From contig NIVC01000760.1 of NCBI GenBank assembly GCA_002269645.1, forward strand, positions 65,972-129,971: a stretch of DNA of 64,000 bases, in the 5' to 3' direction. The notes below the pieces were generated by a model. It saw nothing but the letters and a program-made list of their open reading frames with translations, ran no database searches and was not told the DNA's origin. Below, one piece after another: positions 2,086 through 49,001 of this stretch (position 1 is the first letter of the stretch; every line of letters begins with the position of its first letter). The translations under genes were made by a program, and so were the position numbers. This DNA comes from Macrostomum lignano. Lineage: Eukaryota.

Positions 2086-2704
2086 GCGATTAAGGTGTTG
2101 TAATATTTAATTTGAAATAGAAAAGAAATTTCAGCTGAGCTTTTTATGGTCATCAAATAAAGTATTTGTTATTAAATTTCAGTTAAAGCACACTATTTTT
2201 ATAAACTCGATTTTTACTCTCGCTTACATTTGCCCATAGACACACTTATTTAAACAGCCTGATTTTTACTTACTACTGTCAGTAACAAAAGACGCTTACT
2301 GCTCCAATTTTGGTTAATAATGTTTATTCTACTAACCTATATAACACATTAGTTTAGGTTTACGTCTGTGTTTTTTATTTAAATATTTCCAACAGTTCTA
2401 TGAGAAATTGCAATGCCACCTTCGACTGTAACTGTTTTCGCAACTGCAAACAATAGATAATTATAATTTGTTTATTTGTCTGTGTAGTTGCTTTAGTGAT
2501 AAATAAACGGCATTGGCTCTTCACTGCATGTCTGACAGATTGCTGCGTTGGAAACTGGGACTTGGGACTTCATCAGTTATGTTGATTTTACGTGTAAAGC
2601 CCGCTTATAAAAACTTTTTAATTATTGAATTTGCTTTTGTCTTCTTTCTGGCTGATAACGATTATTTTATATGGGCCAAGTGCAAGTTCTCCGATTGCTG
2701 ACCC

Positions 2705-3105
2705 ACCACCCTTGCAGATCCTCAGTTGCTGGGCCAGCCTCCCAGATCCTCAGTTGCTGGGCCAGCCTCCCAGATCCTCAGTTGCTGGGCCAGCCTCCCA
2801 GATCCTCAGTTGCTGGGCCAGCCTCCCAGATCCTCAGTTGCTGGGCCAGCCTCCCAGATCCTCAGTTGCTGGGCCAGCCTCCCAGATCCCCAGTTGCTGG
2901 GCCAGCCTCCCAGATGCCCAGTTGCTGGGCCAGCCTCCCAGATCCTCAGTTTCTGGGCCAGCCTCCCAGATCCTCAGTTGCTGGGCCAGCCTCCCAGATC
3001 CCCAGTTGCTGGGCCAGCCTCCCAGATGCCCAGTTGCTGGGCCAGCCTCCCAGATCCTCAGTTGCTGGGCCAGCCTCCCAGATGCCCAGTTGCTGGGCCA
3101 GCCTC
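2705..3105 (+). repeat. 28-bp minisatellite CAGATCCTCAGTTGCTGGGCCAGCCTCC (family copy 1)
   Basis: Same unit occurs at 3748-4280, 36430-38055 and 42715-43100. Confidence 0.95.
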
Positions 3106-3747
3106 TGTCTAAACTATTCATTTTCAGCTTTCCTCAATCGACTCCCAAGGCCCAGAATCAGGGTGGTTGATCAATAATTATAACTCTCTTCATCAGGTTT
3201 CTCCTTGCCGCTGGAATCCAGCTGTCGGGTTGAGTGCGTTCTATAATTAGCAGGTGCAAATTAGGCTAGCGAGCGATTGTGTATTTGTGCTGTTCGTTTT
3301 TGGCTCAAGAGGAAGCAATGCTCGGCTAAAATTTTTTTCAAGGTAATCACACTTCTCCGTAAACCAGCCGCTGCTAAAACAGCAATTTCATGTGGCTTAG
3401 AGCTGGTCGAAGTCTGGAATTAAGTGCCAAAAAATAAGTAATTACCGTTGAGCAGTCGCAGTCTGTGCCAGCTCACACCTGGCAGCGAGAAACTTCACTC
3501 CTGTAATTTTGATCCAATCGGTTTGAGCTGATTCAGAGCAGGGTTTTCTTGGAGCTGTACAATTATATCCTTCATTCCTGCTAACTTGTGGATGGTTATT
3601 AAATGTGTGTGCTAGTTTTTGGTGGCAAATGATTGATTGAATGATTGTGCAGCCAGGTTGAGGGTCTGCTGTGCTTCTAACTTGCGGTAGTTTAAAGCAT
3701 GCCTTGCTGGGCATTTTAATCTGATGGCTAGTTTTATTGACTCAGTG

Positions 3748-4280
3748 AATCCTCAGTTGCTGAGCCAGCCTCCCAGATCCTCAGTTGCTGGGCCAGCTTC
3801 TCAGATCCTCAGTTGCTAAGCGAGCCTCCCAGATCCTCAGTTGCTGGGCCAGCCTCCCAGATCCTCAGTTGCTAAGCGAGCCTCCCAGATCCTCAGTTGC
3901 TGGGCCAGCTTCTCAGATCCTCAGTTGCTGAGCCAGCCTCCCAGATCCTCAGTTGCTGAGCCAGCCTCCCAGATCCTCAGTTGCTGAGCCAGCCTCCCAG
4001 ATCCTCAGTTGCTGGGCCAGCTTCTCAGATCCTCAGTTGCTGAGCCAGCCTCCCAGATCCTCAGTTGCTGGGCCAGCTTCTCAGATCCTCAGTTGCTGAG
4101 CCAGCCTCCCAGATCCTCAGTTGCTGGGCCAGCCTCCCAGATCCTCAGTTGCTGGGCCAGCCTCCCAGATCCTCAGTTGCTGGGCCAGCTTCTCAGATCC
4201 TCGTTGCTGAGCCAGCCTCCCAGATCCTCAGTTGCTGGGCCAGTCTCCTAAGATCCTCAGTTGCTGAGCCAGCCTCCCAG
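3748..4280 (+). repeat. 28-bp minisatellite family copy 2
   Basis: Same unit with GAGCC/TTCTC variants. Confidence 0.95.
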
Positions 4281-4984
4281 AGCCTCAATTAATGGGCCAG
4301 CCTCGCATATTCTGTAATCTCTAAGCGCAACCAAAGCTGTTCACAGCAACAAACTCATGGCTATATTTTTCTGGATTTTCTTAGCTCAAGCGACAATTTG
4401 TGCGCCGCATCAGGCAAACGATCTGAAATTCCCAAACGGCCTCAGCCTCGACCTCCATCAGCAGTTTTCATATTCATAGAAATTGAGGAGTTTTGTTAAT
4501 TCAACCGCAAATTTACGAGTGTTTGGCTTTTCCCTCCTGGGGGGAGGTCGGTCCAGCGAGTTGGCTGGAATAAAATTGATTTCAGCTTTGAAACGCGATA
4601 GCGCGCGCGTTGAGCTGTGTAATGAACGGAGCCTAAATCATGCCAATTTTGATGAAGGAGTCAGCTGCCTTTTCCCCCTTATGGATCCACACTTTACTTG
4701 CTGCAACTGCCACCCTGGCAACAGAACCGAATATTAAATGAGCTGGCATCTGGGGGGGGGTGTTACAGATCGGCCAGTCTCATCTGCAATCATTTATATT
4801 CTGTCTGTTTAATCCCCCAATATCCCCTTAGCTATAGTCACTTGCTCCAATATTCCCAAATGAATGCTGCGAGTGTAATTTAGGAGTATCTGTAAATTTT
4901 ATTTTAGAAATTGCTTTCCTCAATTGGTTTCTTAGAGATTTTGTTTATTTATTCTCTGGTTCTCTGGTTAGATTTTTTCTGGGC

Positions 4985-10483: not shown

Positions 10484-13695
<3,212 letters not shown>

Positions 13696-30949: not shown

Positions 30950-33900
30950 TCAGTCTTCGATGGCTTTAACAAAAATTTCAGAGTAAGGCTGCTTCTGACG
31001 CAGATGAACTCGACGCTGTTTGGCCAACTCTGTGCGCAAAACAATAAGTAAAACTGTTTGTGCCTTGATTTGCTACAAATGCTGACTTAAGTAGACATGC
31101 AAGGAAAAAGTTTACAAAACAGAGAGACTGGGTGAAAGGGGAGACTCGGATAATTAAGGAGATTGGGAAGAATAAGAGAATGGGAAGATTAGGAGAATGG
31201 GAAGATTGGGAGAATGGGAAGATTGGGAGAATGGGAAGATTAGGAGAATGGGAAGATTGGGAGAATGGGAAGAATAGGAGAATGGGAAGATTGGGAGAAT
31301 GGGAAGAATAAGAGAATGGGAAGAATAGGAGAATGGGAAGATTGGGAGAATGGGAAGATTGGGAGAATGGGAAGAATAGGAGAATGGGAAGAATAGGAGA
31401 ATGGGAAGATTGGGAGAATGGGAAGAATAGGAGAATGGGAAGAATAGGAGAATGGGAAGAATAGGGAGAATGGAAAGAATAGGAGAATGGGAGGACTGGG
31501 AGAATGAGAAGATTGGAAGAATGGGAAGATTGGAAGAATGGGAGGATTAGAAGAATTGGAAGAATAGGAGAATGGGAAGATTGGGAGAATTGAGGGATAG
31601 AGAGAATCGAGGAGATGGGGATAATGGGGAGTTTAGGAGAATTGAGAATTGGGAGATCTGGAAGTTTGAGACGGTGAGACTTTAAGAGGAAAAATGAATA
31701 AATCAGAAATGAATAAAACAAGTCTCACCAAGCAGGCCGGCAAAAGCTCTGGCAGCCTCTTTCTTTGTAGCGCCATTGGGCGGGCACAGCGACGCGAACG
31801 GCCGATAGTCGTCGCCAATCTCGCTGCCGCTGTCAGCCTGTTGCTGTTGAGACCGGCGAATTCCCTCCATCAACAGCTCCTGGTCTTGCGAAAGCGGTGG
31901 TCTGCAATCGAATTAAGTACATGCTGCACTTTGCCAAAGTTAAAGAATTAATTAATAAACTGCTTTGCTGTTTTAAATACTCAAATAGCCGCCCTCAGAC
32001 CCGGGTGTTACAAAAAACAGTCCAGGCTTGTTAAAAATTTCACCCCATCTGATCTCAAGCCAATCTTCGATTATTAATTAACCGTAGATTGACGAAATCA
32101 TAACTAATTGGGACGCACTCCGATATCATCAGTGGGCGGATGTTATTAAAAAAACGCCATTTTTTACCGATAGGTCAATCCAATCTACAGATTAGTCAAT
32201 CCAATCTACAGATTGGTCAAACCAGTCTACAGATTGGTCAATCCAATCTACAGATTAGTCAATCCAGTCTACCGATTGGTCAATCCAATCTACAGATTGG
32301 TCAAACCAGTCTACACATTGGTCAATCTAATCTACAGATTTGTCAATCTAATCTACAGATCGGTCGATACAATCTAAATATTGGCCTAAAAATGACGAAC
32401 CTTTCGGCTACAAACGAAGCGAAAACCTCTTCCGGCGGTGGTGGCGGCTGCAGAAAAAAATCTTCAAAAGCAGGCGGCGCCGGCTGCTGAGCGGGTGGCG
32501 TCATCATTGGAGGCTCTGGCTGCTGCTGCTGCTGAGGCTCCGGTTCCGGCGGCTGCTGCTGCGGCTGCTCAGCTTCCGGTGGCACGGCTTCCGACTGGAT
32601 AACGGTGGGCACCTGGACGCGTTCCTCGCTAATTCGGGGCAGATTCTGACCGGACTGCATGGATATTGTGGACATGTTGAGGCCCGAGAGCCGGGCACTG
32701 GGTCGGCCGCCAGCGGACAGTCGGGGCAGCTCATAATCAAGCAGTTCCTAGTATAGGGAATAGTTGAATGAAAGCTTGAGAATGTATAGGCTAATTATAA
32801 CCTCGACCGAGATGTCAACGTAACTTTCAATTAGACTCAGAACTTGCTCATTAGATCCCAGATTCCAATATCCCACTCCCACAAACCCAAAATCTTTCAC
32901 TCAATCCCCAATATCCCAACTCAAATATCCCTAACATCCCAATTCACATATCCCTAACATCCCAATTCACATATCCCCAACATCCCAACTAAAAAATCAC
33001 CAAGATAACAACTCAAATATCCCCAATATCCCAACTCACAGATCCCCAATATCCCAACTAAAAAATCCCCAATATCCCAGCTCAAAGATCCCCAATATCC
33101 CAACTCAGATCTCCAATATCCCAACTTAAATATCCCCAATATCCCAACTTAAATATCCCCAATATCCCAACTTGATTATCCCCAATATCCCAACTCAAAT
33201 ATCCCCAATATCCCAACTCAAATATCCCCAATATCCCAACTCAAATATCCCCAATATCCCAACTCAAATATCCCTAACATCCCAATTCAAATATCCCTAA
33301 CATCCCAACTCAAAAATCACCAAGATAACAACTCAAATATCCCCAATATCCCAACTCAGATCTCCAATATCCCAACTCAAAGATCCCCAATATCCCAACT
33401 AAAAAATCCCCAATATCCTAACTCAAACTTGAATATCCCCAATATCCCAACTCAAATATCCCCAATATAACAACTTGAATATCCCCAATATCCCAACTCA
33501 AATATCCCCAATATCCCAACTTGAATATCCCCAATATCCCAACTCAAATATCCCCAATATCCCAACTTGAATATCCCCAATATCCCAACTCAAATATCCC
33601 CAATATCCCAACTCAAATATCCCCAATATCCCAACTCAAATATCCCCAATATCCCAACTCAAAGATCCTCAATATCCTATGCCCAGATCCCAACAGCTGC
33701 GGCACTCACAGGCGGCACATAGTGAGCACTCTCCTCTCGTTTATGCTCCCAGACTCGAAGCAGTTTATCGCTCATTGGTTGCCGACTAGGCCGCAGCAGC
33801 AAGCCGGCCGCATCAACAGTAGACAAAGCCAGAGCTCTCGGACCTTTAGTTGGCGGCGGCAGAGTCAACGGTTTCATCAGCTCGTCGCCGTGATCCATAT

Positions 33901-36900
33901 TCCAGCGCAGCCGGCGGCTATTGTACTCGGTTAGGCCGTCAACAATTAGTAGGCGAGGTTTGGCGTGACGAGGCTGATGAGGCTGCGGCTGCTGCTGCTG
34001 CTGTTGCTGTCTGCGAGGCTGCAGCGGCTGCATTTCAAATTGCAGCACCGGAAAAGCTGGCGGCGGTGGTGGTGGCGGCGGCGGCGAAGTGCGCGGCGGC
34101 TGCTGGTCAGCTGGAGGCTGCATCGGTGGCGGCGACTGGCGATCGGCGGCGCTGGAGTGAGAGGAGACAATTTTCTCATTCAGAGATTCAGTGAAATCTC
34201 ACCCGGAAATTCAGTAGAATCTCACCCAGAGATTCAGTAGAAACGACACCCAGAGATTCAGTAGAATCTCACTCAGAGATTCAGTAGAATCTCATCCGGA
34301 AATTCAGTAGAATCTCACCCAGAGATTCAGTAGAATCTCACTCAGAGATTCAGTAGAATCTCATCCGGAAATTCAGTAGAATCTCACCCAGAGATTCAGT
34401 AGAATCTCACCCAGAGATTCAGTAGAATCTCACCCAGAGATTCAGTAGAATCTCACCCAGAGATTCAGTAGAATCTCACCCAGAGATTCAGTAGAATCTC
34501 ACCCAGAGATTCAGTAGAATCTCACCCAGAGATTCAGTAGAATCTCACCCAGAGATTCAGTAGAATCTCACCCAGAGATTCAGTAGAATCTCACCCAGAG
34601 ATTCAGTAGAATCTCACCCAGAGATTCAGTAGAATCTCACCCAGAGATTTAGTAGAATCTCACCCAGAGATTCAGTAGAATCTCACCCAGAGATTCAGTA
34701 GAATCTCACCCAGAGATTTAGTAGAATCTCACCCAGAGATTCAGTAGAATCTCACCCAGAGATTCAGTAGAATCTCACCCAGAGATTTAGTAGAATCTCA
34801 CCCAGAGATTCAGTAGACACGACACACAACAGTTACAGACGAGACACTCACGACACAATAGACACTCCCCCGGGCAGTCCAGCGGCCTGTGGCAATTCCG
34901 CCGTAACATCTCTGGGCAATTCAACTTCCATAGCCGTGGAAGTTGCGGCAGTAGTAGCAGGTGGCGTAGCCGGCAGTTCAACCTGGGGCTGGTCACCAGC
35001 CGCTGGTTCCGGCTGCTGCTGCTGCTGCTCTTCCATTGCTGGCAGATCTTCTTCCGCTTTTCGTTTGCCCCGACGAGTAACTCGTTCGGGCAGCTGCTCC
35101 AGCTCCGGCTGCTGCTCCCGCTGTTGCAGCATCTCTTCTTCATCGCGTTGCTGCTGCTGCTGCTCTTGCTGCTCTTGCTGTTGCTGCTGTTCGCACAGCA
35201 ATCGTTCGAAATCACCGGCCGGAAACAGCAGACGTTCGCCAGCCTTCAATCGATCGAACATGGCGCTCAGATCCAGCGGGGGAATGTCCGCTTCCGGTAG
35301 CGAGGGCAGCTCCTCTTCCGGCGGCTGCTGCTGTAGGTTTATTGGGAAAGGCGATTTCTCTCTGGTAGGTTTATTGGGAAAGGCGATTTCTCTCTGGTAG
35401 GTTTATTGGGACAGGCGATTTCTCTCTGGTAGGTTTATTGGGAAAGGCGATTTCTCTCTGGTAGGTTTATTGGGACAGGCGATTTCTCTCTGGTAGGTTT
35501 ATTGGGAAAGGGGATTTCTCTCTAGTAGGTATATTGGGAAAGGCGATTTCTCTCTGGTAGGTTTATTGGGACAGGCGATTTCTCTCTGGTAGATGTATTG
35601 GGACAGGCGATTTCTCTCTGGTAGGTATATTGGGACAGGCGATTTCTCTCTGGTAGATTTATTGGGAAAGGCGATTTCTCTCTGGTAGGTTTATTGGGAA
35701 AGGCGATTTCTCTCTGGTAGGTTTATTGGGACAGGCGATTTCTCTCTGGTAGGTTTATTGGGACAGGAGATTTCTCTCTGGTAGATTTATTGGGACAGGC
35801 GATTTCTCTCTGGTAGGTTTATTGGGACAGGCGATTTCTCTCTGGTAGGTTTATTGGGACAGGCGATTTCTCTCTGGTAGGTTTATTGGGACAGGCGATT
35901 TCTCTCTGGTAGATGTATTGGGACAGGCGATTTCTCTCTGGTAGGTTTATTGAGAAAGGGGATTTCTCTCTAGTAGGTATATTGGGAAAGGCGATTTCTC
36001 TCTCGTAGGATTATTGGGAAAGGCGATTTCTCTCTGGTAGGTATATTGGGACAGGCGATTTCTCTCTGGTATGTTTATTGGGAAAGGCGATTTCTCTCTG
36101 GTGATTAAAAGTGAATTGATTAAAGCTTAAAAATTTGGCTAACTCTTGTAAAACCAAACTTTTTCTTTACCTCACCGCCTGCGCCATCGCGTCGCCTCTG
36201 ACGTGACACCCGCGGCGTCAGAGTGGTGTGAATTTCGGCGCTGGTTCTGCCCCCAAAGTCTTTGGAGGGAGAAATGCCAGAAACGGCGCCACTGCCTGCG
36301 GCCGAGTCGGCGCCAATTAGAATTGACTGGCTGGCCGAGGGCTCCAGAGCGAAGCTCGTGTCCAAGATTGTGATGTCCTCCTGGCGGGCCGTGAACCTGG
36401 GGTGGTGACAGGTGGCGGCTACTGAGGATCTGTGAAGCGGGCTGAGAATCTGGGAGGCTGGCAGAGGTTCTGAGGATCAGGGAGGCTGGCCCAGAAACTG
36501 AGGATCTGGGAGGCTGGCCCAGCAACTGAGGATCTGGGAGGCTGGCCCAGCAACTGAGGATCTGGGAGGCTGGCCCAGCAACTGAGGATCCGGGAGGCTG
36601 GCCCAGCAACTGAGGATCTGGGAGGCTGGCCCAGCAACTGACACTCTGGGAGGCTGGCCCAGCAACTGAGGATCTGGGAGGCTGGCCCAGCAACTGAGGA
36701 TCTGGGAGGCTGGCCCAGCAACTGAGGATCTGGGAGGCTGGCCCAGCAACTGAGGATCCGGGAGGCTGGCCCAGAAACTGAGGATCTGGGAGGCTGGCCC
36801 AGCAACTGAGGATCTGGGAGGCTGGCCCAGCAACTGAGGATCTGGGAGGCTGGCCTAGCAACTGAAGATCTGGGAGGCTGGCCCAGCAACTGAGGATCTG

Positions 36901-39900
36901 GGAGGCTGGCCCAGCAACTGAAGATCTGGGAGGCTGGCCCAGCAACTGAGGATCTGGGAGGCTGGCCCAGCAACTGAAGATCTGGGAGGCTGGCCCAGCA
37001 ACTGAGGATCTGGGAGGCTGGCCCAGCAACTGAAGATCTGGGAGGCTGGCCCAGCAACTGAGGATCTGGGAGGCTGGCCCAGCATCTGAGGATCTGGGAG
37101 GCTGGCTCAGCAACTGAGGATCTGGGAGGCTGGCCCAGCAACTGAGGATCCGGGAGGCTGGTCCAGCAACTGAGGATCTGGGAGGCTGGCCCAGCAACTG
37201 AGGATCTGGGAGGCTGGTCCAGCAACTGAGGATCTGGGAGGCTGGCCCAGCAACTGAGGATCTGGGAGGCTGGCCCAGCAACTGAGGATCCGGGAGGCTG
37301 GCCCAGCAACTGAGGATCTGGGAGGCTGGTCCAGCAACTGAGGATCTGGGAGGCTGGTCCAGCAACTGAGGATCTGGGAGGCTGGCCCAGCAACTGAGGA
37401 TCTGGGAGGCTGGCCCAGCAACTGAGGATCTGGGAGGCTGGCCCAGCAACTGAGGATCCGGGAGGCTGGCCCAGCAACTGAGGATCCGGGAGGCTGGCCC
37501 AGCAACTGAGGATCCGGGAGGCTGGCCCAGCAACTGAGGATCCGGGAGGCTGGCCCAGCAACTGAGGATCCGGGAGGCTGGCCCAGAAACTGAGGATCTG
37601 GGAGGCTGGCCCAGAAACTGAGGATCTGGGAGGCTGGCCCAGCAACTGAGGATCTGGGAGGCTGGCCCAGCAACTGAGGATCTGGGAGGCTGGCCCAGCA
37701 ACTGAGGATCTGGGAGGCTGGCCCAGCAACTGAGGATCCGGGAGGCTGGCCCAGAAACTGAGGATCTGGGAGGCTGGCCCAGCAACTGAGGATCTGGGAG
37801 GCTGGCCCAGCAACTGAGGATCTGGGAGGCTGGCCCAGCAACTGAGGATCTGGGAGGCTGGCCCAGATACTGAGGATCTGGGAGGCTGGCCCAGCAACTG
37901 AGGATCTGGGAGGCTGGCCCAGCAACTGAGGATCTGGGAGGCTGGCCCAGCAACTGAGGATCTGGGAGGCTGGCCCAGCAACTGAGGATCCGGGAGGCTG
38001 GCCCAGCAACTGAGGATCTGGGAGGCTGGCCCAGCAACTGAGGATCCGGGAGGCACATCAAACGCATTTCCATGAAACAGCAGAAACCAGCTGACCTAGC
38101 AAAGGAGGAGGACTCAGCCCGGCCGGCACGGTTGCCCCCGCCGCCGCGGCGCAGCTCGGAGAACTCCAGATCTTCCGGCAGGCTGAGTCGCATCAGCTCC
38201 ATTGGTGGCTGTTCGTCGGCGCCGGTGAAATCGGCGGCAGAAAACGACTGCAACTGTTGGAGTTGGCGAAGGTCGACCCCGGCAGCGTCGGCAACCAGGG
38301 AGATGTCCAATTCGTATTGCTGATTATGGGCGGCCGAGCTAGCCTTGCCAGTTGGTCTGCATTTTTTTAGATTTAAAATAATATCATCTTGTGGAAGGGC
38401 TGAGCACATGTACATTGGAGTAGGGGGAGGCACATGTACATTGAAGTAGGGGGAGGGCACATGTACATTGGGGTAGGAGGGCACATGTACATTGAAGTAG
38501 GGGGGCTCATGTACATTGAAGTAGGGGGGGCACATGTACATTGAAGTAGGGGGGGGGCACATGTACATTGAAGTAGGGGGGCAAATGTACATTAAAGTAG
38601 GGGGGAGGGCACATGTACATTGGGGTAGGAGGGCACATGTACATTGGGGTAGGAGGGCACATGTACATTGGGGTAGGAGGGCACATGTACATTGGGGTAG
38701 GAGGGCACATGTACATTGGGGTAGGAGGGCACATGTACATTGGGGTAGGAGGGCACATGTACATTGGGGTAGGAGGGCACATGTACATTAAAGTAGAAGG
38801 TGAAAGAATCGTAGGACAGACCAATATGTACATTAGGGTAAGGAGCCGATGGGCTAGACAAAAGTACGAAGGGCTAGGCAGGAGTGGAAGGGCTGGGCAC
38901 ATGTACATTGGGGTAAGGAGTGGAAGGGCTGGGCACATGTACATTGGGGTAAGGAGTTGAAGGGCTGGGCACATGTACATTGGGGTAGGAATGGAGTCTT
39001 CCCACATAACTTAAATGCTAATTTGCGTTATTTTCATGTTTATGATGAACAAAATATTATTAAACCAATCACCAATAAATAAAAACAAATAAACCGAGCA
39101 AATACACTATCTTGTGTTTCGCGAACAAAGTTAGCAAAAGGTGCTATTATTTATAACTAAAAAAACTTTACAATGTATACTCTTTACATTCGTTGAACTA
39201 AATTGCAAAATAACAAATAAAAATTTTGAACAGAACTTAAACATCTTAACAGAGAAGCGAACAAGCAAACCTTTTAACGTCTGGTCGCCAAGAGCGACAG
39301 CAGCGTCTGTAGAACTCGGCTGTTTCCTCTATAGAGGATTATTTAATAGTATTAAAAAAGGAAATTAAAAATAGTCAATGGAGCGAAAAGCGAATTCTTG
39401 TTTAGGGTAATTTAATTTAGTACATTGCAGATATGTACTATTTGGAGCATGTACATTTTTTTATACGAGCGCACTATTATGTCAGTTTAGATTGTAGGCA
39501 TGTACCATTGGGTGAGTGTACATTGTAGGTATGTACCATTGGGTGAGTGTACATTGTAGGTATGTACCATTGGGTGAGTGTACATTGTAGGTATGTACTA
39601 TTGGGTGAGTGTACATTGTAGGTATGTACTATTGGGTGAGTGTACATTGTAGGTACATGTATGTACCATTGGGTGAGTGTACATTGTAGGTATGTACTAT
39701 TGGGTGAGTGTACATTGTAGGTATGTACCATTGGGTGAGTGTACATTGTAGGTATGTACTATTGGGTGAGTGTACATTGTAGGTATGTACTATTGGGTGA
39801 GTGTAAATTGTAGGTATGTACTATTGGGTGAGTGTACATTGTAGGTATGTACTATTGGGTGAGTGTACATTGTAGGTATGTACTATTGGGTGAGTGTACA

Positions 39901-40482
39901 TTGTAGGTATGTACTATTGGGTGAGTGTACATTGTAGGTATGTACTATTGGGTGAGTGTACATTGTAGGTATGTACTATTGGGTGAGTGTACATTGTAGA
40001 GCATGCAATTTTAGGTGTGTAAATTTTAAATACGAGTTCTTGCATGACTAGAGTGAAATTCAGGTAAGGCCGATAAAAAGCAAACTGTTTAAAATCGATA
40101 GTAAGAAGTAATTACAACACAACAAAATAAAAAAGAACTTACTTTCAAGCCAGACGACCTTCAATTGAAACACAACACAGGCGCCGTTCATCAAAAGGGC
40201 GCTTAAATAGAGTGAGAATTTTTTACTGCGCTGCTCGCAAATCTCCGCCAACAGTTCCTGGCTGTGGATTTATTAAATAAGTGCCGATATGTAGTGTAAA
40301 TAACATTGTGGCTTGAAATTTAAAGCTAAGAAATATAACTGTTGTATAATTCGGACTCACCAAGTGACGCTAATATCGCAGCTGAGAACATCGCGCGGCT
40401 TAATTGATTGACGGGTCGCGCCCAGCCAGATTAGAGCAAATTTGCCCTTCTTAACCGATAACAATTCGTGATTGTAGAACAT
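30950..40482 (-). CDS. REC8: Meiotic cohesin alpha-kleisin REC8, 9 exons: 40482-40361, 40261-40143, 38387-38096, 36396-36171, 35330-34852, 34151-33710, 32747-32401, 31901-31729, 31029-30950 (2280 nt, 759 aa)
   Basis: N-terminus MFYNHELLSVKKGKFALIWLGATRQ...CQELL...KFSLYLSALLMNG matches the Rad21/Rec8 N-domain, and the FSLYLSA motif favours Rec8 over Rad21. Also FTARQEDITI, the central LLIVDGLTEY...LTLPPPTK motif and a C-terminal winged helix FASLCPPNGATKKEAARAFAGLLELAKQRRVHLRQKQPYSEIFV. All 8 introns are GT-AG with matching phases. Confidence 0.9.
31150..31660. repeat. 18-bp GGGAAGATTGGGAGAAT-type array, REC8 intron 8
   Basis: Direct inspection. Confidence 0.85.
32170..32380. repeat. 21-bp ATCCAATCTACAGATTGGTCA array, REC8 intron 7
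   Basis: Direct inspection. Confidence 0.85.
32860..33680. repeat. 23-bp ATATCCCCAATATCCCAACTCAA array, REC8 intron 6
   Basis: Period 23. Confidence 0.9.
34180..34815. repeat. 23-bp GAGATTCAGTAGAATCTCACCCA array, REC8 intron 5
   Basis: Period 23. Confidence 0.95.
35334..36100. repeat. 32-bp TTTCTCTCTGGTAGGTTTATTGGGAAAGGCGA array, REC8 intron 4
   Basis: Period 32. Confidence 0.95.
36430..38055 (-). repeat. 28-bp minisatellite family copy 3, REC8 intron 3
   Basis: About 58 units; source of the 806-aa and 545-aa false ORFs. Confidence 0.95.
38400..39000. repeat. 24-bp CATGTACATTGGGGTAGGAGGGCA array, REC8 intron 2
   Basis: Period 24. Confidence 0.9.
39490..40000. repeat. 31-bp GTACATTGTAGGTATGTACTATTGGGTGAGT array, REC8 intron 2
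   Basis: Period 31. Confidence 0.95.
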
Positions 40483-40582
40483 TTTCGATTTTTATGGCAT
40501 GCATTAAAAATGAGCTTCTTGCTAATCATAACTACTTATACTCGTAGATAGCAGTAAACGGTTTTTGTCATTATTATTTATT

Positions 40583-40655
40583 CTGAGAAAAAAAAGCTGT
40601 TTTGCAAAAAAATAATTAAGTTGGGAGGCAACAATTATTGACTTTCTTGTTTATT
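40583..40655 (-). promoter_or_regulatory. Candidate poly(A) signal of ANKZF1 followed by a candidate trans-splice acceptor for REC8
   Basis: Minus-strand AATAAA at 40655-40650. CTTTTTTTTCTCAG acceptor ends at 40583, 100 nt before the REC8 ATG. Confidence 0.45.
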
Positions 40656-41164
40656 CATTAAAGAAAACGATCTGCCCTACACCACACTGACACAAAACAG
40701 CAAAACAAATTGCAAGAAAGTCGGAGAAGTCGGAAGCAATCCAAGTATTAAAACACTTATTTAAATAATTATCACAATATACTCCATCAAACAACTTAAA
40801 ATAATATTGTTAAGTACCCTGAATAATTGTCAAGGTTTTCTTTACGGTAAATACGAATACATATTATTAATTATTTTTTCATCACTCTACTAGCAGTAGT
40901 CTCGGCGGCAGTTTTATCCCGATGTCTGCGCAGGCAATTAGTAGAACAGAATTCGTATCGATCGTAGTGAAACGGTACTTTGCCAGTGATATCGGCGGCG
41001 CATTGAAAGCAGCGCGACAGAATCAGCGGCTTCTGATTGGTGCCGCCCGCAGACTGTTGAGACGCCGCCGCTGCCGCTAGAAGACGCCGTTCGGCGGCCA
41101 GAGCCATCTTCTGGGTGTCGCTAAGAGTCTAAAAAATGTAAAAATTTGACGCTTATAAAAAATC

Positions 41165-42095
41165 ATAATGACACCTGTATGACACCAATCATGACATCTG
41201 TGACACCAATCATGACACCTGTATGACACCAATCATGACATCTGTGACACCAATCATGACATCTGTGACACCAATCATGACACCTGTGACACCAATCATG
41301 ACACCTGTATGACACCAATCATAATGACACCTGTATGACACCAATCATAATGACACCTGTATGACACCAATCATAATGACACCTGTATGACACCAATCAT
41401 AATGACACCTGTATGACACCAATCATAATGACACCTGTGTGACACCAATCATGACATCTGTGACACCAATCATGACACCTGTGACACCAATCATGACACC
41501 TGTATGACACCAATCATAATGACACCTGTATGACACCAATCATAATGACACCTGTATGACACCAATCATAATGACACCTGTGTGACACCAATCATGACAT
41601 CTGTGACACCAATCATGACATCTGTGACACCAATCATGACACCTGTATGACACCAATCATGACATCTGTGACACCAATCATGACACCTGTATGACACCAA
41701 TCATGACATCTGTGACACCAATCATGACACCAATCATGACATCTGTGACACCAATCATGACACCAATCATGACATCTGTGACACCAATCATGACACCTGT
41801 ATGACACCAATCATAATGACACCTGTATGACACCAATCATAATGACACCTGTATGACACCAATCATAATGACACCTGTATGACACCAATCATAATGACAC
41901 CTGTATGACACCAATCATGACACCTGTGACACCAATCAAGACACCTGTGACACCAATCATGACACCTGTGACACCAATCATGACACCTGTATGACACCAA
42001 TCATAATGAAACCTGTATGACACCAATCATGACACCTGTATGGCACCAATCATAATGACACCTGTATGACACCAATCATAATGAAACCTGTATGC
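41165..42095. repeat. ATGACACCAATC / ATGACACCTGT composite array, last ANKZF1 intron
   Basis: Direct inspection. Confidence 0.9.
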
Positions 42096-42714
42096 ATCAC
42101 ATTGGCAACCCGTACCAATACTCTATCAATCCCATTGTACCTGAAACCGCTCTCGTTCGTCGGCCTCAGCCTGAGCCGCCGCTTCGGCCGCCCGTTTCGC
42201 CCGATCCCTGTCCCGTTTAGCCGCTTTAGCCGCCCGCTTTTTATCCGCCTCTTTCAATCGGCGAGCCTCCAACTGTTCAGGAGTCAGCGGCGCGGGAATC
42301 CCGGCCGACGCGTAGTCGTGCCAATCCGGCCGTTTGGCCACAAATTTTCGAAACGCCTCGCGGACAGATTTATTACCAGCCAGCTGATATGGCGTCCGGC
42401 CAGCCAAGTCGCGCTGGCAGGGGTCAGCCCCTGACTCCAGCAGGCTGAGCACTGTCCTGCCGCAGCTGTTTGACGCGGCCAGGTGCAGCAGTGTGGCGCA
42501 TTTCTGACCCAACGGCTGGCGGAGACGCTCGGCCACACTGTCCGGTTCGGAACTCGCCAACTCGGACAGCAACTGGTCCAGAGTTTCCGGATCGGCGCAG
42601 GCCACGGCAGTAAATAGCTGATTCTGGAGGGCCCAGTCGGCTGGCTGGGACGCTTCGGCGCCTGCGGGCTGAGAGCAGTTCAAGGCGACTGCAGTGCGAA
42701 TCCTGGGATGGCCC

Positions 42715-43100
42715 AGCTACTGAGGATCTGGGAGGCTGGCTTAGCAACTGAGGCTCTGGGAGGCTGGCCCAGCAACTGAGGATCTGGGAGGCTGGCCCAG
42801 CAACTGAGGATCTGGGAGGCTGGCTCAGCAACTGACACTCTGGGAGGCTGGCCCAGCAACTGAGGATCAGGGAGGCTGGCCCAGCAACTGAGGATCTGGG
42901 AGGCTGGCTCAGCAACTGACACTCTGGGAGGCTGGCCCAGCAACTGAGGATCAGGGAGGCTGGCCCAGCAACTGAGGATCTGGGAGGCTGGCCCAGCAAC
43001 TGAGGATCTGGGAGGCTGGCTCAGCAACTGAGGATCTGGGAGGCTGGCCCAGCAACTGAGGATCTGGGAGGCTGGCCCAGCAAGTGAGGATCTGGAAGGC
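42715..43100 (-). repeat. 28-bp minisatellite family copy 4, ANKZF1 intron
   Basis: Same unit as the other copies. Confidence 0.95.
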
Positions 43101-43869
43101 AGGCGGCAGCGGCCAAGCAACCGGATGGTTAGTGACAGTCAACAGTCGGATATAAGCTAGCAATCCAGAACAATCAGAGATTACTTAACCAGTATTTGTA
43201 CCTGATCATCATCTCCAGCTTCCAGGGGCTCCTCATCGCAGAGCTGCACTTGAAGGTTGCCATCACCGTTGTCGTCAGTCTTGACCGACTGCTCAGCAAC
43301 CGCAGCAGCCGAAGTAGACGAAGACGAGGATTTCTTCTTCCGCCTAGCAACACCGGAGGGCACCGGGGCCCGGCCGGAATGCCCCTCAGACATTGGAAAC
43401 TGCTGCCGGCGTCTTGTCGGCGGCGATCGATTCTGGCTACTCAATTTCGAGTCATCCTTGATTGAATCTTCCGTTGCTGCTGACTGGTTGCTTGGCAACA
43501 TAGAAGCTGAGTGCCGCTTCAAATACAAATTACCGTCTGGGGATTGGCTGACAATACGAAGGCCGCTCTCGATTCGATTGACCAGCTGTCGGGATTCCGC
43601 CTGGCCAATGGAGGCCGCATCAGCGTCCGAGTCGTAGACGTGCAGGCAGGCGAGCTCACGGTGCACCCGGACCAGCTCGCTGTGAGTTGGCCGCCTGGTG
43701 CTGATTGGGATGCGGCGAACTCGAGGATCTGATCTGATTAGTGCATGCGGTGGGTGATATCAGGGACTAGGAATACAGGTTGTAGATATATTGATCTGCG
43801 CGAAATTGCAGACTTCAGCTTAGATGATGGGGAAAATTTCATACAAATCTCAGTGGAGAGAGACTGGCA

Positions 43870-44750
43870 GGGAAATCTCATGTAGGATAAAGCTGGGGAG
43901 GGGAAATCTCATGTAGGATAAAGCTGGGGAGGGGAAATCTCATGTAGGATAAAGCTGGGGAGGGGAAATCTCATGTAGGATAAAGCTGGGGAGGGGAAAT
44001 CTCATGTAGGATAAAGCTGGGGAGGGGAAATCTCATGTAGGATAAAGCTGATGAGGGGAAATCTCATGTAGGATAAAGCAAGGGAGGGGAAATCTCATGT
44101 AGGATAAAGCTGGGGAGGGGAAATCTCATGTGAGATGAAGCTGGGGACGGGAAATCTCATGTAGGATAAAGCTGGGAAGGGGAAATCTCATGTAGGATAA
44201 AGCTGGGGAGGGGAAATCTCATGTAGGATAAAGCTGGGGAGGGGAAATCTCATGTAGGATAAACCTGGGGAGGGGAAATCTCATGTAGGATAAAGCTAGC
44301 GAGGGGAAATCTCATGTAGGATAAAGCAAGGGAGGGGAAATCTCATGTAGGATAAAGCTGGGGAGGGGAAATCTCATGTGAGATAAAGCTGGGGAGGGGA
44401 AATCTCATGTAGGATAAAGCTAGGGAGGGGAAATCTCATGTAGGAAAAGGCTAGGGAGGGGAAATCTCATGTAGGAAAAGGCTAGGGAGGGGAAATCTCA
44501 TGTAGGATAAAGCTGGGGAGGGGAAATCTCATGTAGGATAAAGCTGGGGAGGGGAAATCTCATGTAGGATAAAGCTGGGGAGGGGAAATCTCATGTAGGA
44601 AAAGGCTAGGGAGGGGAAATCTCATGTAGGATAAAGCTGGGGAGGGGAAATCTCATGTAGGATAAAGCTGGGGAGGGGAAATCTCATGTAGGATAAAGCT
44701 GGGGAGGGGAAATCTCATGTAGGATAAAGCTGGGGAGGGGAAATCTCACC
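43870..44750. repeat. 31-bp AAATCTCATGTAGGATAAAGCTGGGGAGGGG array, ANKZF1 intron
   Basis: Period 31. Confidence 0.95.
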
Positions 44751-45384
44751 GAGCATAAAGCTATGATACGGAAATCCCACGGAAAAATCAGATTAGAATA
44801 AGCAGCAAATGTCCACACAAAAAACTCACTTTGCAATCGGCGATGGAGGGCCTAGAAAGATGGCCTGCTGCTGCTTACTAATCCGAATCAATACGAAATG
44901 ACAAGCGTTCAATTCGTCAGTCCACGAGGCCAGCAGGTTTTGAATCTTCTCGCGCAGATGCGCCTCGCAACGGCGCCGAAGATTGGCGCCGGCAGATTTC
45001 GGTCCGCTAGCGCCGCCAGATTGAGAATCGCGCGCGCTCTGCAGTCCGCCCTGGCGTTTCCGTACGGCGTATTGGTGAAACGTTTTGTGAGCCACGGCTC
45101 GGCCAGATTCGTCAAATATTGCGCCGGCGAAATGACCGCCGGCTAGCATTAGAATTGCCCAGCGAAGCATTCTCGGCAGGGCGGCGGCTCGGCTCAGCAG
45201 AGACTCTTCGCTTGGGGCGGGCAGGTCGAATAGGCATCGGGCTATGCTCACGTACTCGCGGTCTTTGTTTAGGAAGAACAGACGGCCCGACTGGCTGAGC
45301 AGCTGGTGACGGGAGAGCGACGCAAAGCTGCCGTCTGACTGGCCACCGGCCTGCGGGGTCGGGGCGAGGATTCAGGGGCTAGGG

Positions 45385-45640
45385 GTTGAGGGGGATTCTT
45401 ATCTGTAGGGGTTGAGGGGGATTCTTATCTGCAGGGGTTGAGGGGCGATTCTTATCTGTAGGGGTTGAGGGGCGATTCTTATCTGCAGGGGTTGAGGGGC
45501 GATTCTTATCTGCAGGGGTTAAGGGGCGATTCTTATCTGTAGGGGTTGAGGGGGGGTTCTTATCTGTAGGGGTTGAGGGTCGATTCTTATCTGCAGGGGT
45601 TGAGGGGCGATTCTTATCTGTAAGGACGTTAGGGGCGATT
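45385..45640. repeat. 27-bp TTCTTATCTGTAGGGGTTGAGGGGCGA array, ANKZF1 intron
   Basis: Direct inspection. Confidence 0.9.
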
Positions 45641-46069
45641 TTTTTCGCAGCGATATTTTAAGCAGCTAATTTTCAGCTTACCTTGGCATCATTATTTTTA
45701 GCATAACTATTATTATCGTTCTCGGAGCTCGACGAATCCGAATCGTCTTCATCTTCATCGCCCGAGAGGCTGGACAGATCGGACGAAGCAAGCGAGCCGT
45801 CAGGTCCCGCTGCTCCACCGCCGTTGATCAGATTGATCGAATTCGGCTTCGCTAATACAAGCCTGTTGCTTAGCAACCCGATGCCGATTGTACAGATGCC
45901 AATCGGAGCGGAAATGCTCGCGCTGCTCGGCGCAACTGGAGAACTGCTCGCCGCATGTGGCGCATTGGAAAGAATCTAACTGCTGCTGCTGCTTTTGCTG
46001 CTCCTGGGGGAATAGGTTGAATTTACCTTTTAGCTTATCAAGCTGTCAATCTGCTTTTCCATGTGTCTG

Positions 46070-47440
<1,371 letters not shown>

Positions 47441-48745: not shown

Positions 48746-49001
48746 ATTTTTGGGGATTAACATGCAATAATTTAGAAGCAAGACAAAAAACGATGCATGA
48801 AACAATTTCATAATTAACTTAAAACTAAAAAGGCCATGCAAGAAAAAAGCACAGAGAGCAATTATAAAGACATTAAAACAGACAAAAATTCGCAGAGATA
48901 AACTATACACGGATAGATAGATAAGAAGTATGCAATTGAATAAGCAAACAGACAATAGTTGATGACCAATTGTTATGCTATCAATAATTGATTTCCAATA
49001 A

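What the first reader, a model, noticed from the sequence alone, without database searches (positions are those of the whole stretch)
40483..40870. ANKZF1-REC8 junction looks like an intercistronic region
Only 388 bp separate the ANKZF1 stop from the REC8 ATG on the same strand. Within this gap lie AATAAA (40655-50) and, about 65 nt downstream, a strong U-rich acceptor CTTTTTTTTCTCAG (ends 40583) with no obvious upstream donor or room for a promoter. This is the poly(A)-then-trans-splice-site layout of eukaryotic operons. It would tie a meiosis gene to the promoter of housekeeping genes.
Basis: partly seen in the sequence, partly recalled or inferred. Interest (0 to 1): 0.7.

Follow-up and report, generated by a model that had tools for sequence, protein, structure and literature searches.

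The report
Flatworm two-gene operon junction, ANKZF1–REC8

Summary
The window is Macrostomum lignano scaffold NIVC01000760.1 (assembly Mlig_3_7). About 30% of this flatworm's genes are spliced-leader (SL) trans-spliced and about 15% lie in operons.

On the minus strand, 388 bp separate the ANKZF1/Vms1 stop (40873-40871) from the ATG of a Rad21/Rec8-family gene (40482). AATAAA is at 40655-40650 and CTTTTTTTTCTCAG at 40596-40583.

The operon reading is largely supported. GenBank locus tags place ANKZF1 and REC8 in one published transcriptional unit in all three assembly copies. An older UniProt model fuses the two genes.

The three copies differ just upstream of |CCATAAAAATCGAAAATG (exon start 40497) only in how many SL 3'-end bases (..TTGCATG) have overwritten an ATTGCAG| acceptor. 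The assembly was polished with RNA-seq reads, so this is best read as a footprint of SL-bearing reads. The same graded footprint marks the ANKZF1 5' end (46666), which appears to take its start codon from the SL.

I saw no reads, so co-transcription from a single promoter remains inferred.

This is an ordinary member of a known class. Interest is low.

The parts
40871..46666 (-). ANKZF1/Vms1-like gene (GenBank PAA77167.1, BOX15_Mlig018479g3). Coding exons: 46666-46430, 46003-45682, 45350-44830, 43733-43202, 42668-42141, 41128-40871. Stop TAA at 40873-40871.
   Evidence: Pfam bVLRF1, Ank and VATC. 100% match to the M. lignano protein, and the nearest named relatives are ANKZF1. Exon map.
46667..46672 (-). 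Inferred SL trans-splice acceptor of ANKZF1. It reads TTGCTG| in the window, TTCATG| in L002 and TGCATG| in L004, and is inferred to be TTGCAG| in the animal. The first exon base is 46666. SL ..GCAUG|GCC ACU would supply the start codon.
   Evidence: The GenBank CDS of both paralogous copies is 5'-partial and starts exactly at this base. The L002 and L004 copies have no in-frame Met for 246 codons.
40483..40870 (-). Gap of 388 nt between the ANKZF1 stop and the REC8 ATG. It holds the ANKZF1 3'UTR, the intercistronic spacer and a 15-nt REC8 leader. It is 29% G+C and has no tandem repeat.
   Evidence: About 97% identical among the three copies.
40650..40655 (-). AATAAA, the likely poly(A) signal of ANKZF1. 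It lies 216 nt after the stop and is followed by T/GT-rich sequence.
   Evidence: Invariant in all three copies. The cleavage site itself was not observed.
40583..40596 (-).
   Evidence: Present in the window. One T shorter in L003 and disrupted in L002 (CTTTTTGATAAG). Carries no SL footprint. The only strong acceptor in the gap as assembled.
40577..40582 (-). Second AATAAA, an alternative poly(A) signal for ANKZF1.
   Evidence: Conserved in all three copies.
40507..40540 (-). TATAAG (40540-40535) and the Inr-like TCATTTT (40513-40507, A at 40511), 29 nt apart. This is a candidate core promoter, the rival explanation.
   Evidence: Read. Conserved in L002 and L003. It could be a chance match in AT-rich DNA.
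40498..40503 (-). TGCATG, six bases identical to the SL 3' end. Read as a footprint of SL-bearing RNA-seq reads over a natural TTGCAG| acceptor. The inferred trans-splice junction is 40498|40497.
   Evidence: Window AATGCATG|, L002 AATTGCTG|, L003/L004 AATTGCAG|. The assembly was Pilon-polished with RNA-seq (PMC5730564). TTGCAG fits the published acceptor motif YTNCAG (PMC8629364).
30950..40482 (-). Rad21/Rec8-family kleisin gene (REC8-like; GenBank PAA77166.1, BOX15_Mlig018479g4, annotated only from Met at 38202). Full CDS is 768 aa in 10 GT-AG exons: 40482-40361, 40261-40143, 39328-39271, 38356-38096, 36396-36171, 35330-34852, 34151-33710, 32747-32401, 31901-31729, 31029-30950.
   Evidence: Pfam Rad21_Rec8_N. 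C-terminal domain. Exact reconstruction of the 617-aa GenBank product. Full ORF check. The paralogous copy is annotated from the MFY start.
40257..40886 (-). Splice used by the fused ANKZF1-REC8 model (UniProt A0A1I8J6X8). The donor AGA|GTGATG lies inside the last ANKZF1 exon (last exon base 40886). The alternative acceptor ccag|GAACTG lies 4 nt inside REC8 exon 2 (first base 40257).

Best explanation
ANKZF1 and the REC8-like gene are the two cistrons of an SL-resolved operon of Macrostomum lignano.

Proposed mechanism:
1. Transcription starting upstream of ANKZF1 runs through the 388-bp gap.
2. ANKZF1 mRNA is cleaved and polyadenylated after AATAAA at 40655-40650, or possibly after the second AATAAA at 40582-40577.
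3. The 35-nt spliced leader is joined to a TTGCAG| acceptor whose exon starts at 40497, 15 nt before the REC8 ATG.
4. This leaves an intercistronic spacer of roughly 55-145 nt.
5. The resulting REC8 leader contains no upstream AUG except the SL's own, which is followed by CCA UAA.

ANKZF1 is itself trans-spliced at 46666, and the SL's terminal AUG serves as its start codon.

What is shown and what is inferred:
- Shown: the gene identities, the layout, the shared published transcriptional unit, and the graded SL-like bases.
- Inferred: that those bases come from SL-bearing reads, the poly(A) site, and the absence of an internal promoter.
For: 1. **Organism.** The window is 100% identical to M. 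lignano Mlig_3_7 scaffold NIVC01000760.1.

2. **Known biology.** The species has one SL (CGGTCTCTTACTGCGAAGACTCAATTTATTGCATG). About 30% of genes are trans-spliced and 15% lie in operons. The gap between operon genes peaks near 100 bp, and the acceptor motif is YTNCAG (PMC8629364).

3. **Shared transcriptional unit.** Locus tags put ANKZF1 and REC8 as consecutive genes under one transcriptional-unit prefix in all three copies. Such units are RNA-seq assemblies that were cut into genes at experimentally mapped trans-splice and poly(A) signals (PMC5730564).

4. **REC8 boundary.** The copies read AATTGCAG|, AATTGCTG| and AATGCATG|.

5. **ANKZF1 boundary.** The copies read GATTGCTG|, GATTCATG| and GATGCATG|.

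6. **Pattern of differences.** All 7 variable positions across the two boundaries carry the SL base in ungapped register. They are nested outward from the junction. This is what end-to-end-mapped reads starting inside the SL would produce. The assembly was Pilon-polished with STAR-mapped RNA-seq.

7. **Annotated 5' ends.** The GenBank CDS of ANKZF1 in both other copies is 5'-partial and begins exactly at the first base after the junction.

8. **Fused model.** An older gene model fuses the two genes. Such chimeras are treated as a typical by-product of polycistronic precursors (PMC12582326).

9. **Leader quality.** Joining the SL at 40497 removes all upstream ATGs that joining at 40582 would keep.
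Against: - No RNA reads, SL junction counts or poly(A) tags could be inspected.
- The three copies are about 97% identical and RNA-seq reads map to all of them. The three shared-unit annotations are therefore not independent.
- A shared unit can also arise from overlapping or closely abutting UTRs.
- The GenBank REC8 CDS in copy L002 is 5'-partial and starts with KSK directly after an in-frame TAA. This implies an annotated mRNA 5' end 4-6 nt inside the exon I infer, not exactly at the junction.
- A TATAAG/Inr pair lies in the gap.
- The SL-like differences could in principle be real polymorphisms.
Confidence: 0.6

Rival explanations
1. REC8 is SL trans-spliced at 40497, but from its own promoter. 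That promoter would lie in the gap or in the 3' part of ANKZF1, as in a hybrid operon or a monocistronic trans-spliced gene. The shared transcriptional unit would then reflect read-through or abutting UTRs rather than obligatory co-transcription.
For: - Most trans-spliced M. lignano genes are not in operons; about 40% are (PMC8629364).
- TATAAG and Inr-like motifs are in the gap.
- A germline-specific gene behind a housekeeping gene would be easier to regulate with its own promoter.
- RNA-seq assemblers merge close same-strand transcripts.
Against: - The TATA/Inr pair predicts a start at 40511, only 14 nt before the junction. I judge that too short an outron to hold a branch point and pyrimidine tract.
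- The gap is only 388 bp, and most of it is needed for the ANKZF1 3'UTR.
- The distance fits the operon mode near 100 bp.
Confidence: 0.2
2. One reading: an operon in which the SL is joined at CTTTTTTTTCTCAG| (exon start 40582), giving a 100-nt REC8 leader.
For: It is the only strong polypyrimidine-AG in the gap as assembled, and it lies about 65 nt after AATAAA. That layout occurs in only 4.4% of shuffles. It is conserved in L003. It could be a minor or alternative site.
Against: - It is disrupted in L002 (CTTTTTGATAAG).
- It carries no SL-like bases.
- It has C where the published motif YTNCAG has T.
- The leader would carry four extra upstream ATGs as assembled. One of them (40529) opens a reading frame that overlaps the REC8 start out of frame.
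- The annotated L002 REC8 mRNA begins about 88 nt downstream of it.
- The T-runs can equally serve as the U-rich downstream element of the ANKZF1 poly(A) site.
Confidence: 0.1
3. REC8 is an ordinary capped, non-trans-spliced gene driven by the TATAAG/Inr core promoter in the gap. The SL-like bases are chance polymorphisms, and the shared transcriptional unit is an assembly merge.
For: - TATAAG at 40540 and TCATTTT with A at 40511 have canonical 29-nt spacing and are conserved in all copies.
- The annotated L002 5' end (equivalent to 40493-40491) lies 18-20 nt downstream of that Inr. That is compatible with 5' coverage loss.
- TGCATG alone occurs 12-13 times per strand in the window, as chance predicts.
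Against: - All seven variable positions at two independent gene starts change toward the SL base, in register and nested outward from the junction. By my own estimate, taking each derived base as one of three equally likely alternatives, the chance is about (1/3)^7.
- The least altered copy has a perfect YTNCAG acceptor at exactly that place.
- ANKZF1 shows the same pattern exactly at its experimentally cut 5' end.
Confidence: 0.07
4. The two genes form one conjoined gene that makes an ANKZF1-REC8 fusion protein by cis-splicing from 40886 to 40257, as in UniProt A0A1I8J6X8.
For: The fused model exists, and its junction uses a GT donor and an AG acceptor in frame.
Against: - The donor GTGATG is weak, and the acceptor lies 4 nt inside exon 2.
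- The fusion would delete the first 42 residues of the conserved MFY... kleisin N-terminal domain.
- The later evidence-based annotation separates the genes.
- Chimeric models are a known artefact at operons.
Confidence: 0.03

Closest known systems
SL-resolved operons of Macrostomum lignano (Wudarski et al. 2017, PMC5730564; Ustyantsev & Berezikov 2021, PMC8629364)
   Same: Same organism. Both genes lie on one strand with a 388-bp repeat-free gap, below the 1-kb criterion and close to the ~100-bp mode once the 3'UTR is subtracted. The downstream gene is inferred to be trans-spliced at a YTNCAG acceptor. Both genes were cut from one published transcriptional unit.
   Different: Nothing essential differs. 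This particular pair has not been described in any paper I could search. The trans-splice evidence here is indirect.
Caenorhabditis elegans operons (SL2-type; Blumenthal and colleagues; own knowledge)
   Same: A poly(A) signal of the upstream gene is followed by a ~100-nt U-rich spacer and then a trans-splice acceptor just before the downstream ATG. C. elegans operons are enriched for germline-expressed genes, which makes a meiotic gene in an operon unsurprising.
   Different: M. lignano has a single SL and no specialised SL2 (PMC8629364). The first gene here is trans-spliced with the same SL. No Ur element has been defined in flatworms.
Schistosoma mansoni UbCRBP-enolase polycistron and operons of parasitic flatworms (Davis & Hodgson 1997; PMC12582326)
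   Same: Flatworm SL ending in AUG, short same-strand intergenic distances, and chimeric gene models at operons.
   Different: Different gene pair. Whether ANKZF1-REC8 linkage is conserved in other flatworms was not testable here.
SL 3'-terminal AUG used as initiator methionine in flatworms (Cheng et al. 2006, J Biol Chem 281:733, cited in PMC12582326)
   Same: ANKZF1 has no genomic in-frame ATG for 246 codons, and the SL AUG is in frame at the inferred junction (SL..AUG|GCC ACU GUA).
   Different: This concerns the upstream gene, not the junction in question. At REC8 the SL AUG only opens a two-codon upstream reading frame (AUG CCA UAA).

Membership tests
M. lignano SL-resolved operon (criteria of PMC8629364) | The organism has SL trans-splicing and the locus belongs to it | tested here: met
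   The window equals NIVC01000760.1 with 0 mismatches over 24.3 kb. The proteins are named M. lignano. The SL is described in PMC8629364.
M. lignano SL-resolved operon (criteria of PMC8629364) | Adjacent genes on the same strand with no opposite-strand gene between them | tested here: met
   Both genes are on the minus strand. GenBank calls no gene in the gap. The only ORF of 40 aa or more inside the gap is a 47-aa TTG-start ORF on the minus strand (40651-40794), with no sign of being a gene.
M. lignano SL-resolved operon (criteria of PMC8629364) | Repeat-adjusted intergenic distance below 1 kb | tested here: met
   388 bp from stop to ATG, with no tandem repeat in 40483-40870.
M. lignano SL-resolved operon (criteria of PMC8629364) | The downstream gene is SL trans-spliced | tested here: met
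   Met only indirectly. Graded SL-suffix footprints at 40498|40497 across three copies of an RNA-seq-polished assembly. No reads were seen.
M. lignano SL-resolved operon (criteria of PMC8629364) | Acceptor fits the [T/C]TNCAG motif | tested here: met
TTGCAG| in L003/L004 at the inferred junction. No YTNCAG exists in the window's gap as assembled.
M. lignano SL-resolved operon (criteria of PMC8629364) | One polycistronic precursor from a single upstream promoter | tested here: inconclusive
   A shared transcriptional-unit prefix in all three copies and a fused older model point that way. An internal promoter is not excluded, and no precursor reads were seen.
M. lignano SL-resolved operon (criteria of PMC8629364) | Poly(A) signal and cleavage of the upstream gene inside the gap | tested here: inconclusive
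   Two conserved AATAAA hexamers. AATAAA occurs by chance in 51% of shuffles, and the cleavage site was not observable.
C. elegans-type SL2 operon | A specialised SL2 leader for downstream cistrons | not testable with these tools
   The literature reports a single SL in M. lignano (PMC8629364). The locus is not filed under this family; the resemblance is mechanistic only.
Rad21/Rec8 kleisin; REC8 orthologue | N-terminal Rad21_Rec8_N domain and C-terminal winged-helix domain | tested here: met
   PF04825, E 7e-12. PF04824 on the GenBank product. Weak ordered matches to the human RAD21 N-terminus, SA-binding region and C-terminus.
Rad21/Rec8 kleisin; REC8 orthologue | Orthology to REC8 rather than RAD21, and meiotic expression | tested here: inconclusive
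   The N-terminus scores 45.8 bits against human REC8 and 34.7 bits against RAD21. Expression was not testable.
ANKZF1/Vms1 | C2H2 finger, VLRF1 domain, ankyrin repeats and C-terminal VATC | tested here: met
   Pfam results. The best named relatives are ANKZF1 of amphioxus, starfish, coral and mussel at 44-57% identity.

The most novel reading that the evidence does not exclude
REC8 has no promoter of its own and is made only as the second cistron of the ANKZF1 unit. Germline or meiotic restriction of a cohesin subunit would then be imposed after transcription starts, for example by germ-cell-specific read-through of the ANKZF1 poly(A) site coupled to SL addition at 40497.
Probability: 0.25. 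Interest if true: 0.4.

Novelty: new member of a known kind. Interest (0 to 1): 0.22.

Why it matters
The biology is expected, because SL operons are common in this flatworm. The value is mostly practical.

1. Anyone wanting a REC8/germline reporter in M. lignano should not assume that the 388 bp upstream of the ATG is the promoter.
2. The public gene models here are damaged in instructive ways:
   - REC8 is truncated to 617 or 483 aa in two copies.
   - ANKZF1 is 5'-partial, or truncated to 552 aa.
   - One UniProt entry fuses the two genes.
3. The reference assembly seems to carry SL-derived bases that erase AG acceptors and create a spurious genomic ATG (ANKZF1 in L002 and L004). This is a side effect of polishing with RNA-seq in a trans-splicing organism. 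It could be screened for genome-wide, and even used to map trans-splice sites.

Tried and rejected
- **Rfam scan of the window:** no hits.
- **Word-indexed protein searches:** two searches, with the REC8 N-terminus and the VLRF1 exon, found nothing. The exhaustive search then identified the species.
- **Read-level evidence:** I did not pursue it by other means.
- **Locus tags in the literature:** the tags were not found in any searchable paper or held supplement. No paper links Macrostomum and REC8.
- **SL sequence in the window:** no 16-mer of the SL occurs, even with 3 mismatches, so there is no SL RNA gene here. SL-suffix hexamers occur at chance frequency. Those at 48834, 40001 and 31095 are identical in the paralogous copy and were rejected as footprints.
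- **Substitution clusters:** a scan for substitution clusters between copies was swamped by misaligned minisatellites and was not used as a statistic.
- **Bacterial promoter/terminator scanner:** not used, because it does not apply to a metazoan.
- **SL-donated AUG via other acceptors:** my early idea that the window's lack of an ANKZF1 ATG meant other in-frame acceptors was replaced by the junction at 46666 once the paralogous copies were read.

Full report
**1. What is there**

On the minus strand, the last exon of the upstream gene ends ...GTG ATG AAA AAA TAA, with TAA at 40873-40871. The next ATG-initiated conserved ORF (MFYNHELL...) starts at 40482. The gap is therefore 388 nt.

Pfam confirms both gene identities:
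- Upstream gene: bVLRF1 (E 2e-35), an ankyrin repeat, a C2H2-like finger, and a VATC treble clef in the last exon (E 5e-14).
- Downstream gene: Rad21_Rec8_N (E 7e-12).

The kleisin C-terminal winged-helix exons lie near 31800 and 31000. I rebuilt the complete REC8-like CDS as 10 GT-AG exons encoding 768 aa (40482-30950).

**2. Are the motifs more than chance?**

Only weakly. The gap is 29% G+C. In 2000 dinucleotide shuffles:
- at least one AATAAA appears in 51%;
- an equally strong acceptor appears in 24%;
- the AATAAA-then-acceptor layout appears in 4.4%.

A second AATAAA lies at 40582-40577.

**3. Whose genome is it?**

An exhaustive protein search found a 100%-identical protein. Cluster look-up names it Macrostomum lignano PAA77167.1, locus tag BOX15_Mlig018479g3. 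Its contig, NIVC01000760.1 of assembly GCA_002269645.1, matches window 55170-30871 with no mismatch.

M. lignano is a free-living flatworm with the following published features (PMC8629364):
- a single 35-nt spliced leader, CGGTCTCTTACTGCGAAGACTCAATTTATTGCATG;
- about 30% of genes trans-spliced and about 15% in operons;
- a repeat-adjusted gap between operon genes peaking near 100 bp, with a 1-kb cut-off;
- a trans-splice acceptor motif [T/C]TNCAG.

**4. What the public annotation says**

The Mlig_3_7 annotation first assembles RNA-seq into 'transcriptional units'. It then cuts them into genes at experimentally mapped trans-splice and poly(A) signals. Related units share a name prefix (PMC5730564).

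I reconstructed the GenBank REC8 product exactly (617 aa, from an internal Met at 38202). It is PAA77166.1, BOX15_Mlig018479g4. Two further assembly copies of the locus exist:

| Copy | Contig | ANKZF1 | REC8 |
|---|---|---|---|
| Window (L001) | NIVC01000760.1 | Mlig018479g3 | Mlig018479g4 |
| L003/L004 | NIVC01001145.1 | Mlig018479g1 | Mlig018479g2 |
| L002 | NIVC01000051.1 | Mlig005628g1 | Mlig005628g2 |

Two unrelated genes carry consecutive numbers under one prefix in all three copies. This means they were cut from the same assembled unit. In the other two copies numbering starts at ANKZF1, so the upstream BRCT-domain gene (stop at 49004-49002) is probably not part of it.

An older model, UniProt A0A1I8J6X8, fuses ANKZF1 to REC8 exon 2. 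Chimeric models of this kind are treated as a by-product of polycistronic precursors in flatworms (PMC12582326).

**5. Where is the trans-splice site?**

The three copies are about 97% identical across the gap. In L002 it is disrupted to CTTTTTGATAAG.

The more telling variation lies 15 nt before the ATG, just upstream of the invariant CCATAAAAATCGAAAATG:

| Sequence | Bases before the junction |
|---|---|
| L003/L004 | AATTGCAG\| |
| L002 | AATTGCTG\| |
| Window | AATGCATG\| |
| SL 3' end | ..ATTGCATG\| |

Without any indel, the copies differ only in how many bases, counted back from the junction, have become the SL base. L003/L004 keeps the canonical acceptor, L002 has position -2 changed, and the window has positions -2 to -5 changed.

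The same pattern appears at the ANKZF1 5' end, just upstream of the invariant GCCACTGTAGAG:

| Sequence | Bases before the junction |
|---|---|
| Window | GATTGCTG\| |
| L002 | GATTCATG\| |
| L004 | GATGCATG\| |

All seven variable positions carry the SL base, in register, and are nested outward from the junction.

[quoted passage not shown] The same paper's transcriptome mapping used end-to-end alignment. Reads that begin inside the last few SL bases would then align with mismatches just upstream of the junction. They would overwrite the positions nearest the junction most often, which is exactly the gradient seen.

I therefore read these bases as footprints of SL-bearing mRNAs, and the natural acceptor at both sites as ATTGCAG|, which fits YTNCAG.

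Independent support comes from the annotation. The GenBank ANKZF1 CDS in both other copies is 5'-partial (798 aa, ATVEKQQ...) and begins exactly at the first base after the junction. I verified this by exact reconstruction.

**6. Consequences**

- REC8 would be trans-spliced at 40498|40497. The leader is SL + CCAUAAAAAUCGAAA. Its only upstream AUG is the SL's own, followed by CCA UAA.
One of them (40529) opens a frame overlapping the REC8 start out of frame.
- With cleavage 10-25 nt after either AATAAA, the intercistronic spacer is about 130-145 nt or 55-70 nt. These bracket the published ~100-bp mode.
- For ANKZF1, the SL's AUG is in frame (AUG|GCC ACU GUA...). No genomic in-frame Met occurs for 246 codons that include the conserved zinc finger. 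The SL therefore most likely donates the start codon, as described for schistosomes (Cheng et al. 2006, cited).

**7. What remains open**

- I saw no reads.
- The three shared-unit annotations are not independent, because reads map to all three copies.
- A shared unit can arise from abutting UTRs.
- A TATAAG (40540-40535) and a TCATTTT Inr-like motif (A at 40511) are conserved with canonical spacing. However, a start at 40511 would leave only a 14-nt outron, which I judge too short for splicing.
- The L002 REC8 CDS is 5'-partial, starting KSK right after an in-frame TAA. This implies an annotated 5' end 4-6 nt inside the exon rather than at the junction. I cannot explain this offset.
It is a lead only.

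**8. Verdict**

The operon interpretation is partly supported: the right kind of mechanism, probably the wrong acceptor, and no proof of a single promoter. It is an ordinary member of a class that covers about 15% of this animal's genes, and it is already implicit in the public annotation.

Estimated probabilities:
- REC8 is SL trans-spliced at 40497: about 0.8.
- REC8 is also co-transcribed with ANKZF1: about 0.6.

Noticed in passing
window 46672-46667 and 40503-40498 (minus strand); L002 3293-3298 and 9989-9994; L004 5995-6000: The reference assembly appears to carry SL-derived bases directly upstream of trans-splice junctions. They erase the AG acceptor and, in the L002 and L004 copies, create a spurious genomic ATG for ANKZF1. 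The likely cause is polishing with RNA-seq reads.
   Followed up: yes
window 46666 onward (minus strand): ANKZF1 has no genomic in-frame ATG for 246 codons that cover the conserved N-terminus and zinc finger (read in the L002 and L004 copies). The SL's terminal AUG is in frame at the junction, so the SL probably donates the initiator methionine.
   Followed up: partly
window 45835-45829 (minus strand), ANKZF1 exon 2: The window copy reads CAATCTG where copy L002 reads CAG-CTG, a +1 frameshift. The L004 protein follows the L002 frame. This explains why GenBank annotates only 552 aa from an internal Met. It is either a degenerating duplicate or an assembly indel.
   Followed up: partly
window 40482-38203 (minus strand): GenBank REC8 models are N-terminally truncated in two of three copies: 617 aa in the window and 483 aa in L003. 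All N-terminal exons are nevertheless intact in the window's DNA. Only copy L002 is annotated from the MFY start.
   Followed up: yes
window 48770-48761 (minus strand): A 10-nt exact match to the SL 3' end (TTATTGCATG, 12 of 13 with the flank) lies between the BRCT gene and ANKZF1, just before a 20-bp minisatellite. Copies L002 and L004 read TTATTACATG. About 0.06 such matches per strand are expected by chance. It could be another trans-splice footprint or a coincidence.
   Followed up: partly
window 40642 (minus strand): The window has G here, while L002 and L003 have A (CAAGAAAGTC against CAAGAAAATC), 8 nt after the AATAAA at 40655-40650. It could be a one-base poly(A)-tail footprint marking the ANKZF1 cleavage site, or a plain polymorphism.
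   Followed up: no
window 36442-38054, 42709-43104 and about 2620-4290: The same 28-bp minisatellite unit (CTGAGGATCTGGGAGGCTGGCCCAGCAA) fills a REC8 intron and an ANKZF1 intron and also occurs, in the opposite orientation, far away in the window. Nearly every intron here holds a 17-32-bp minisatellite or a tetranucleotide array.
   Followed up: no
window 49002 to beyond 59355 (minus strand); window 10487-11816 (minus strand): Neighbouring genes. One is a large BRCT-domain gene (product 1645 aa, with polyglutamine tracts) ending 2.3 kb upstream of ANKZF1, or about 0.85 kb after removing tandem repeats. The other is a homeobox gene with long His and Pro runs.
   Followed up: partly
L002 9995-10009: The GenBank REC8 CDS of this copy is 5'-partial and begins KSK directly after an in-frame TAA. 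This implies an annotated mRNA start 4-6 nt downstream of the inferred SL junction. The offset is unexplained.
   Followed up: partly
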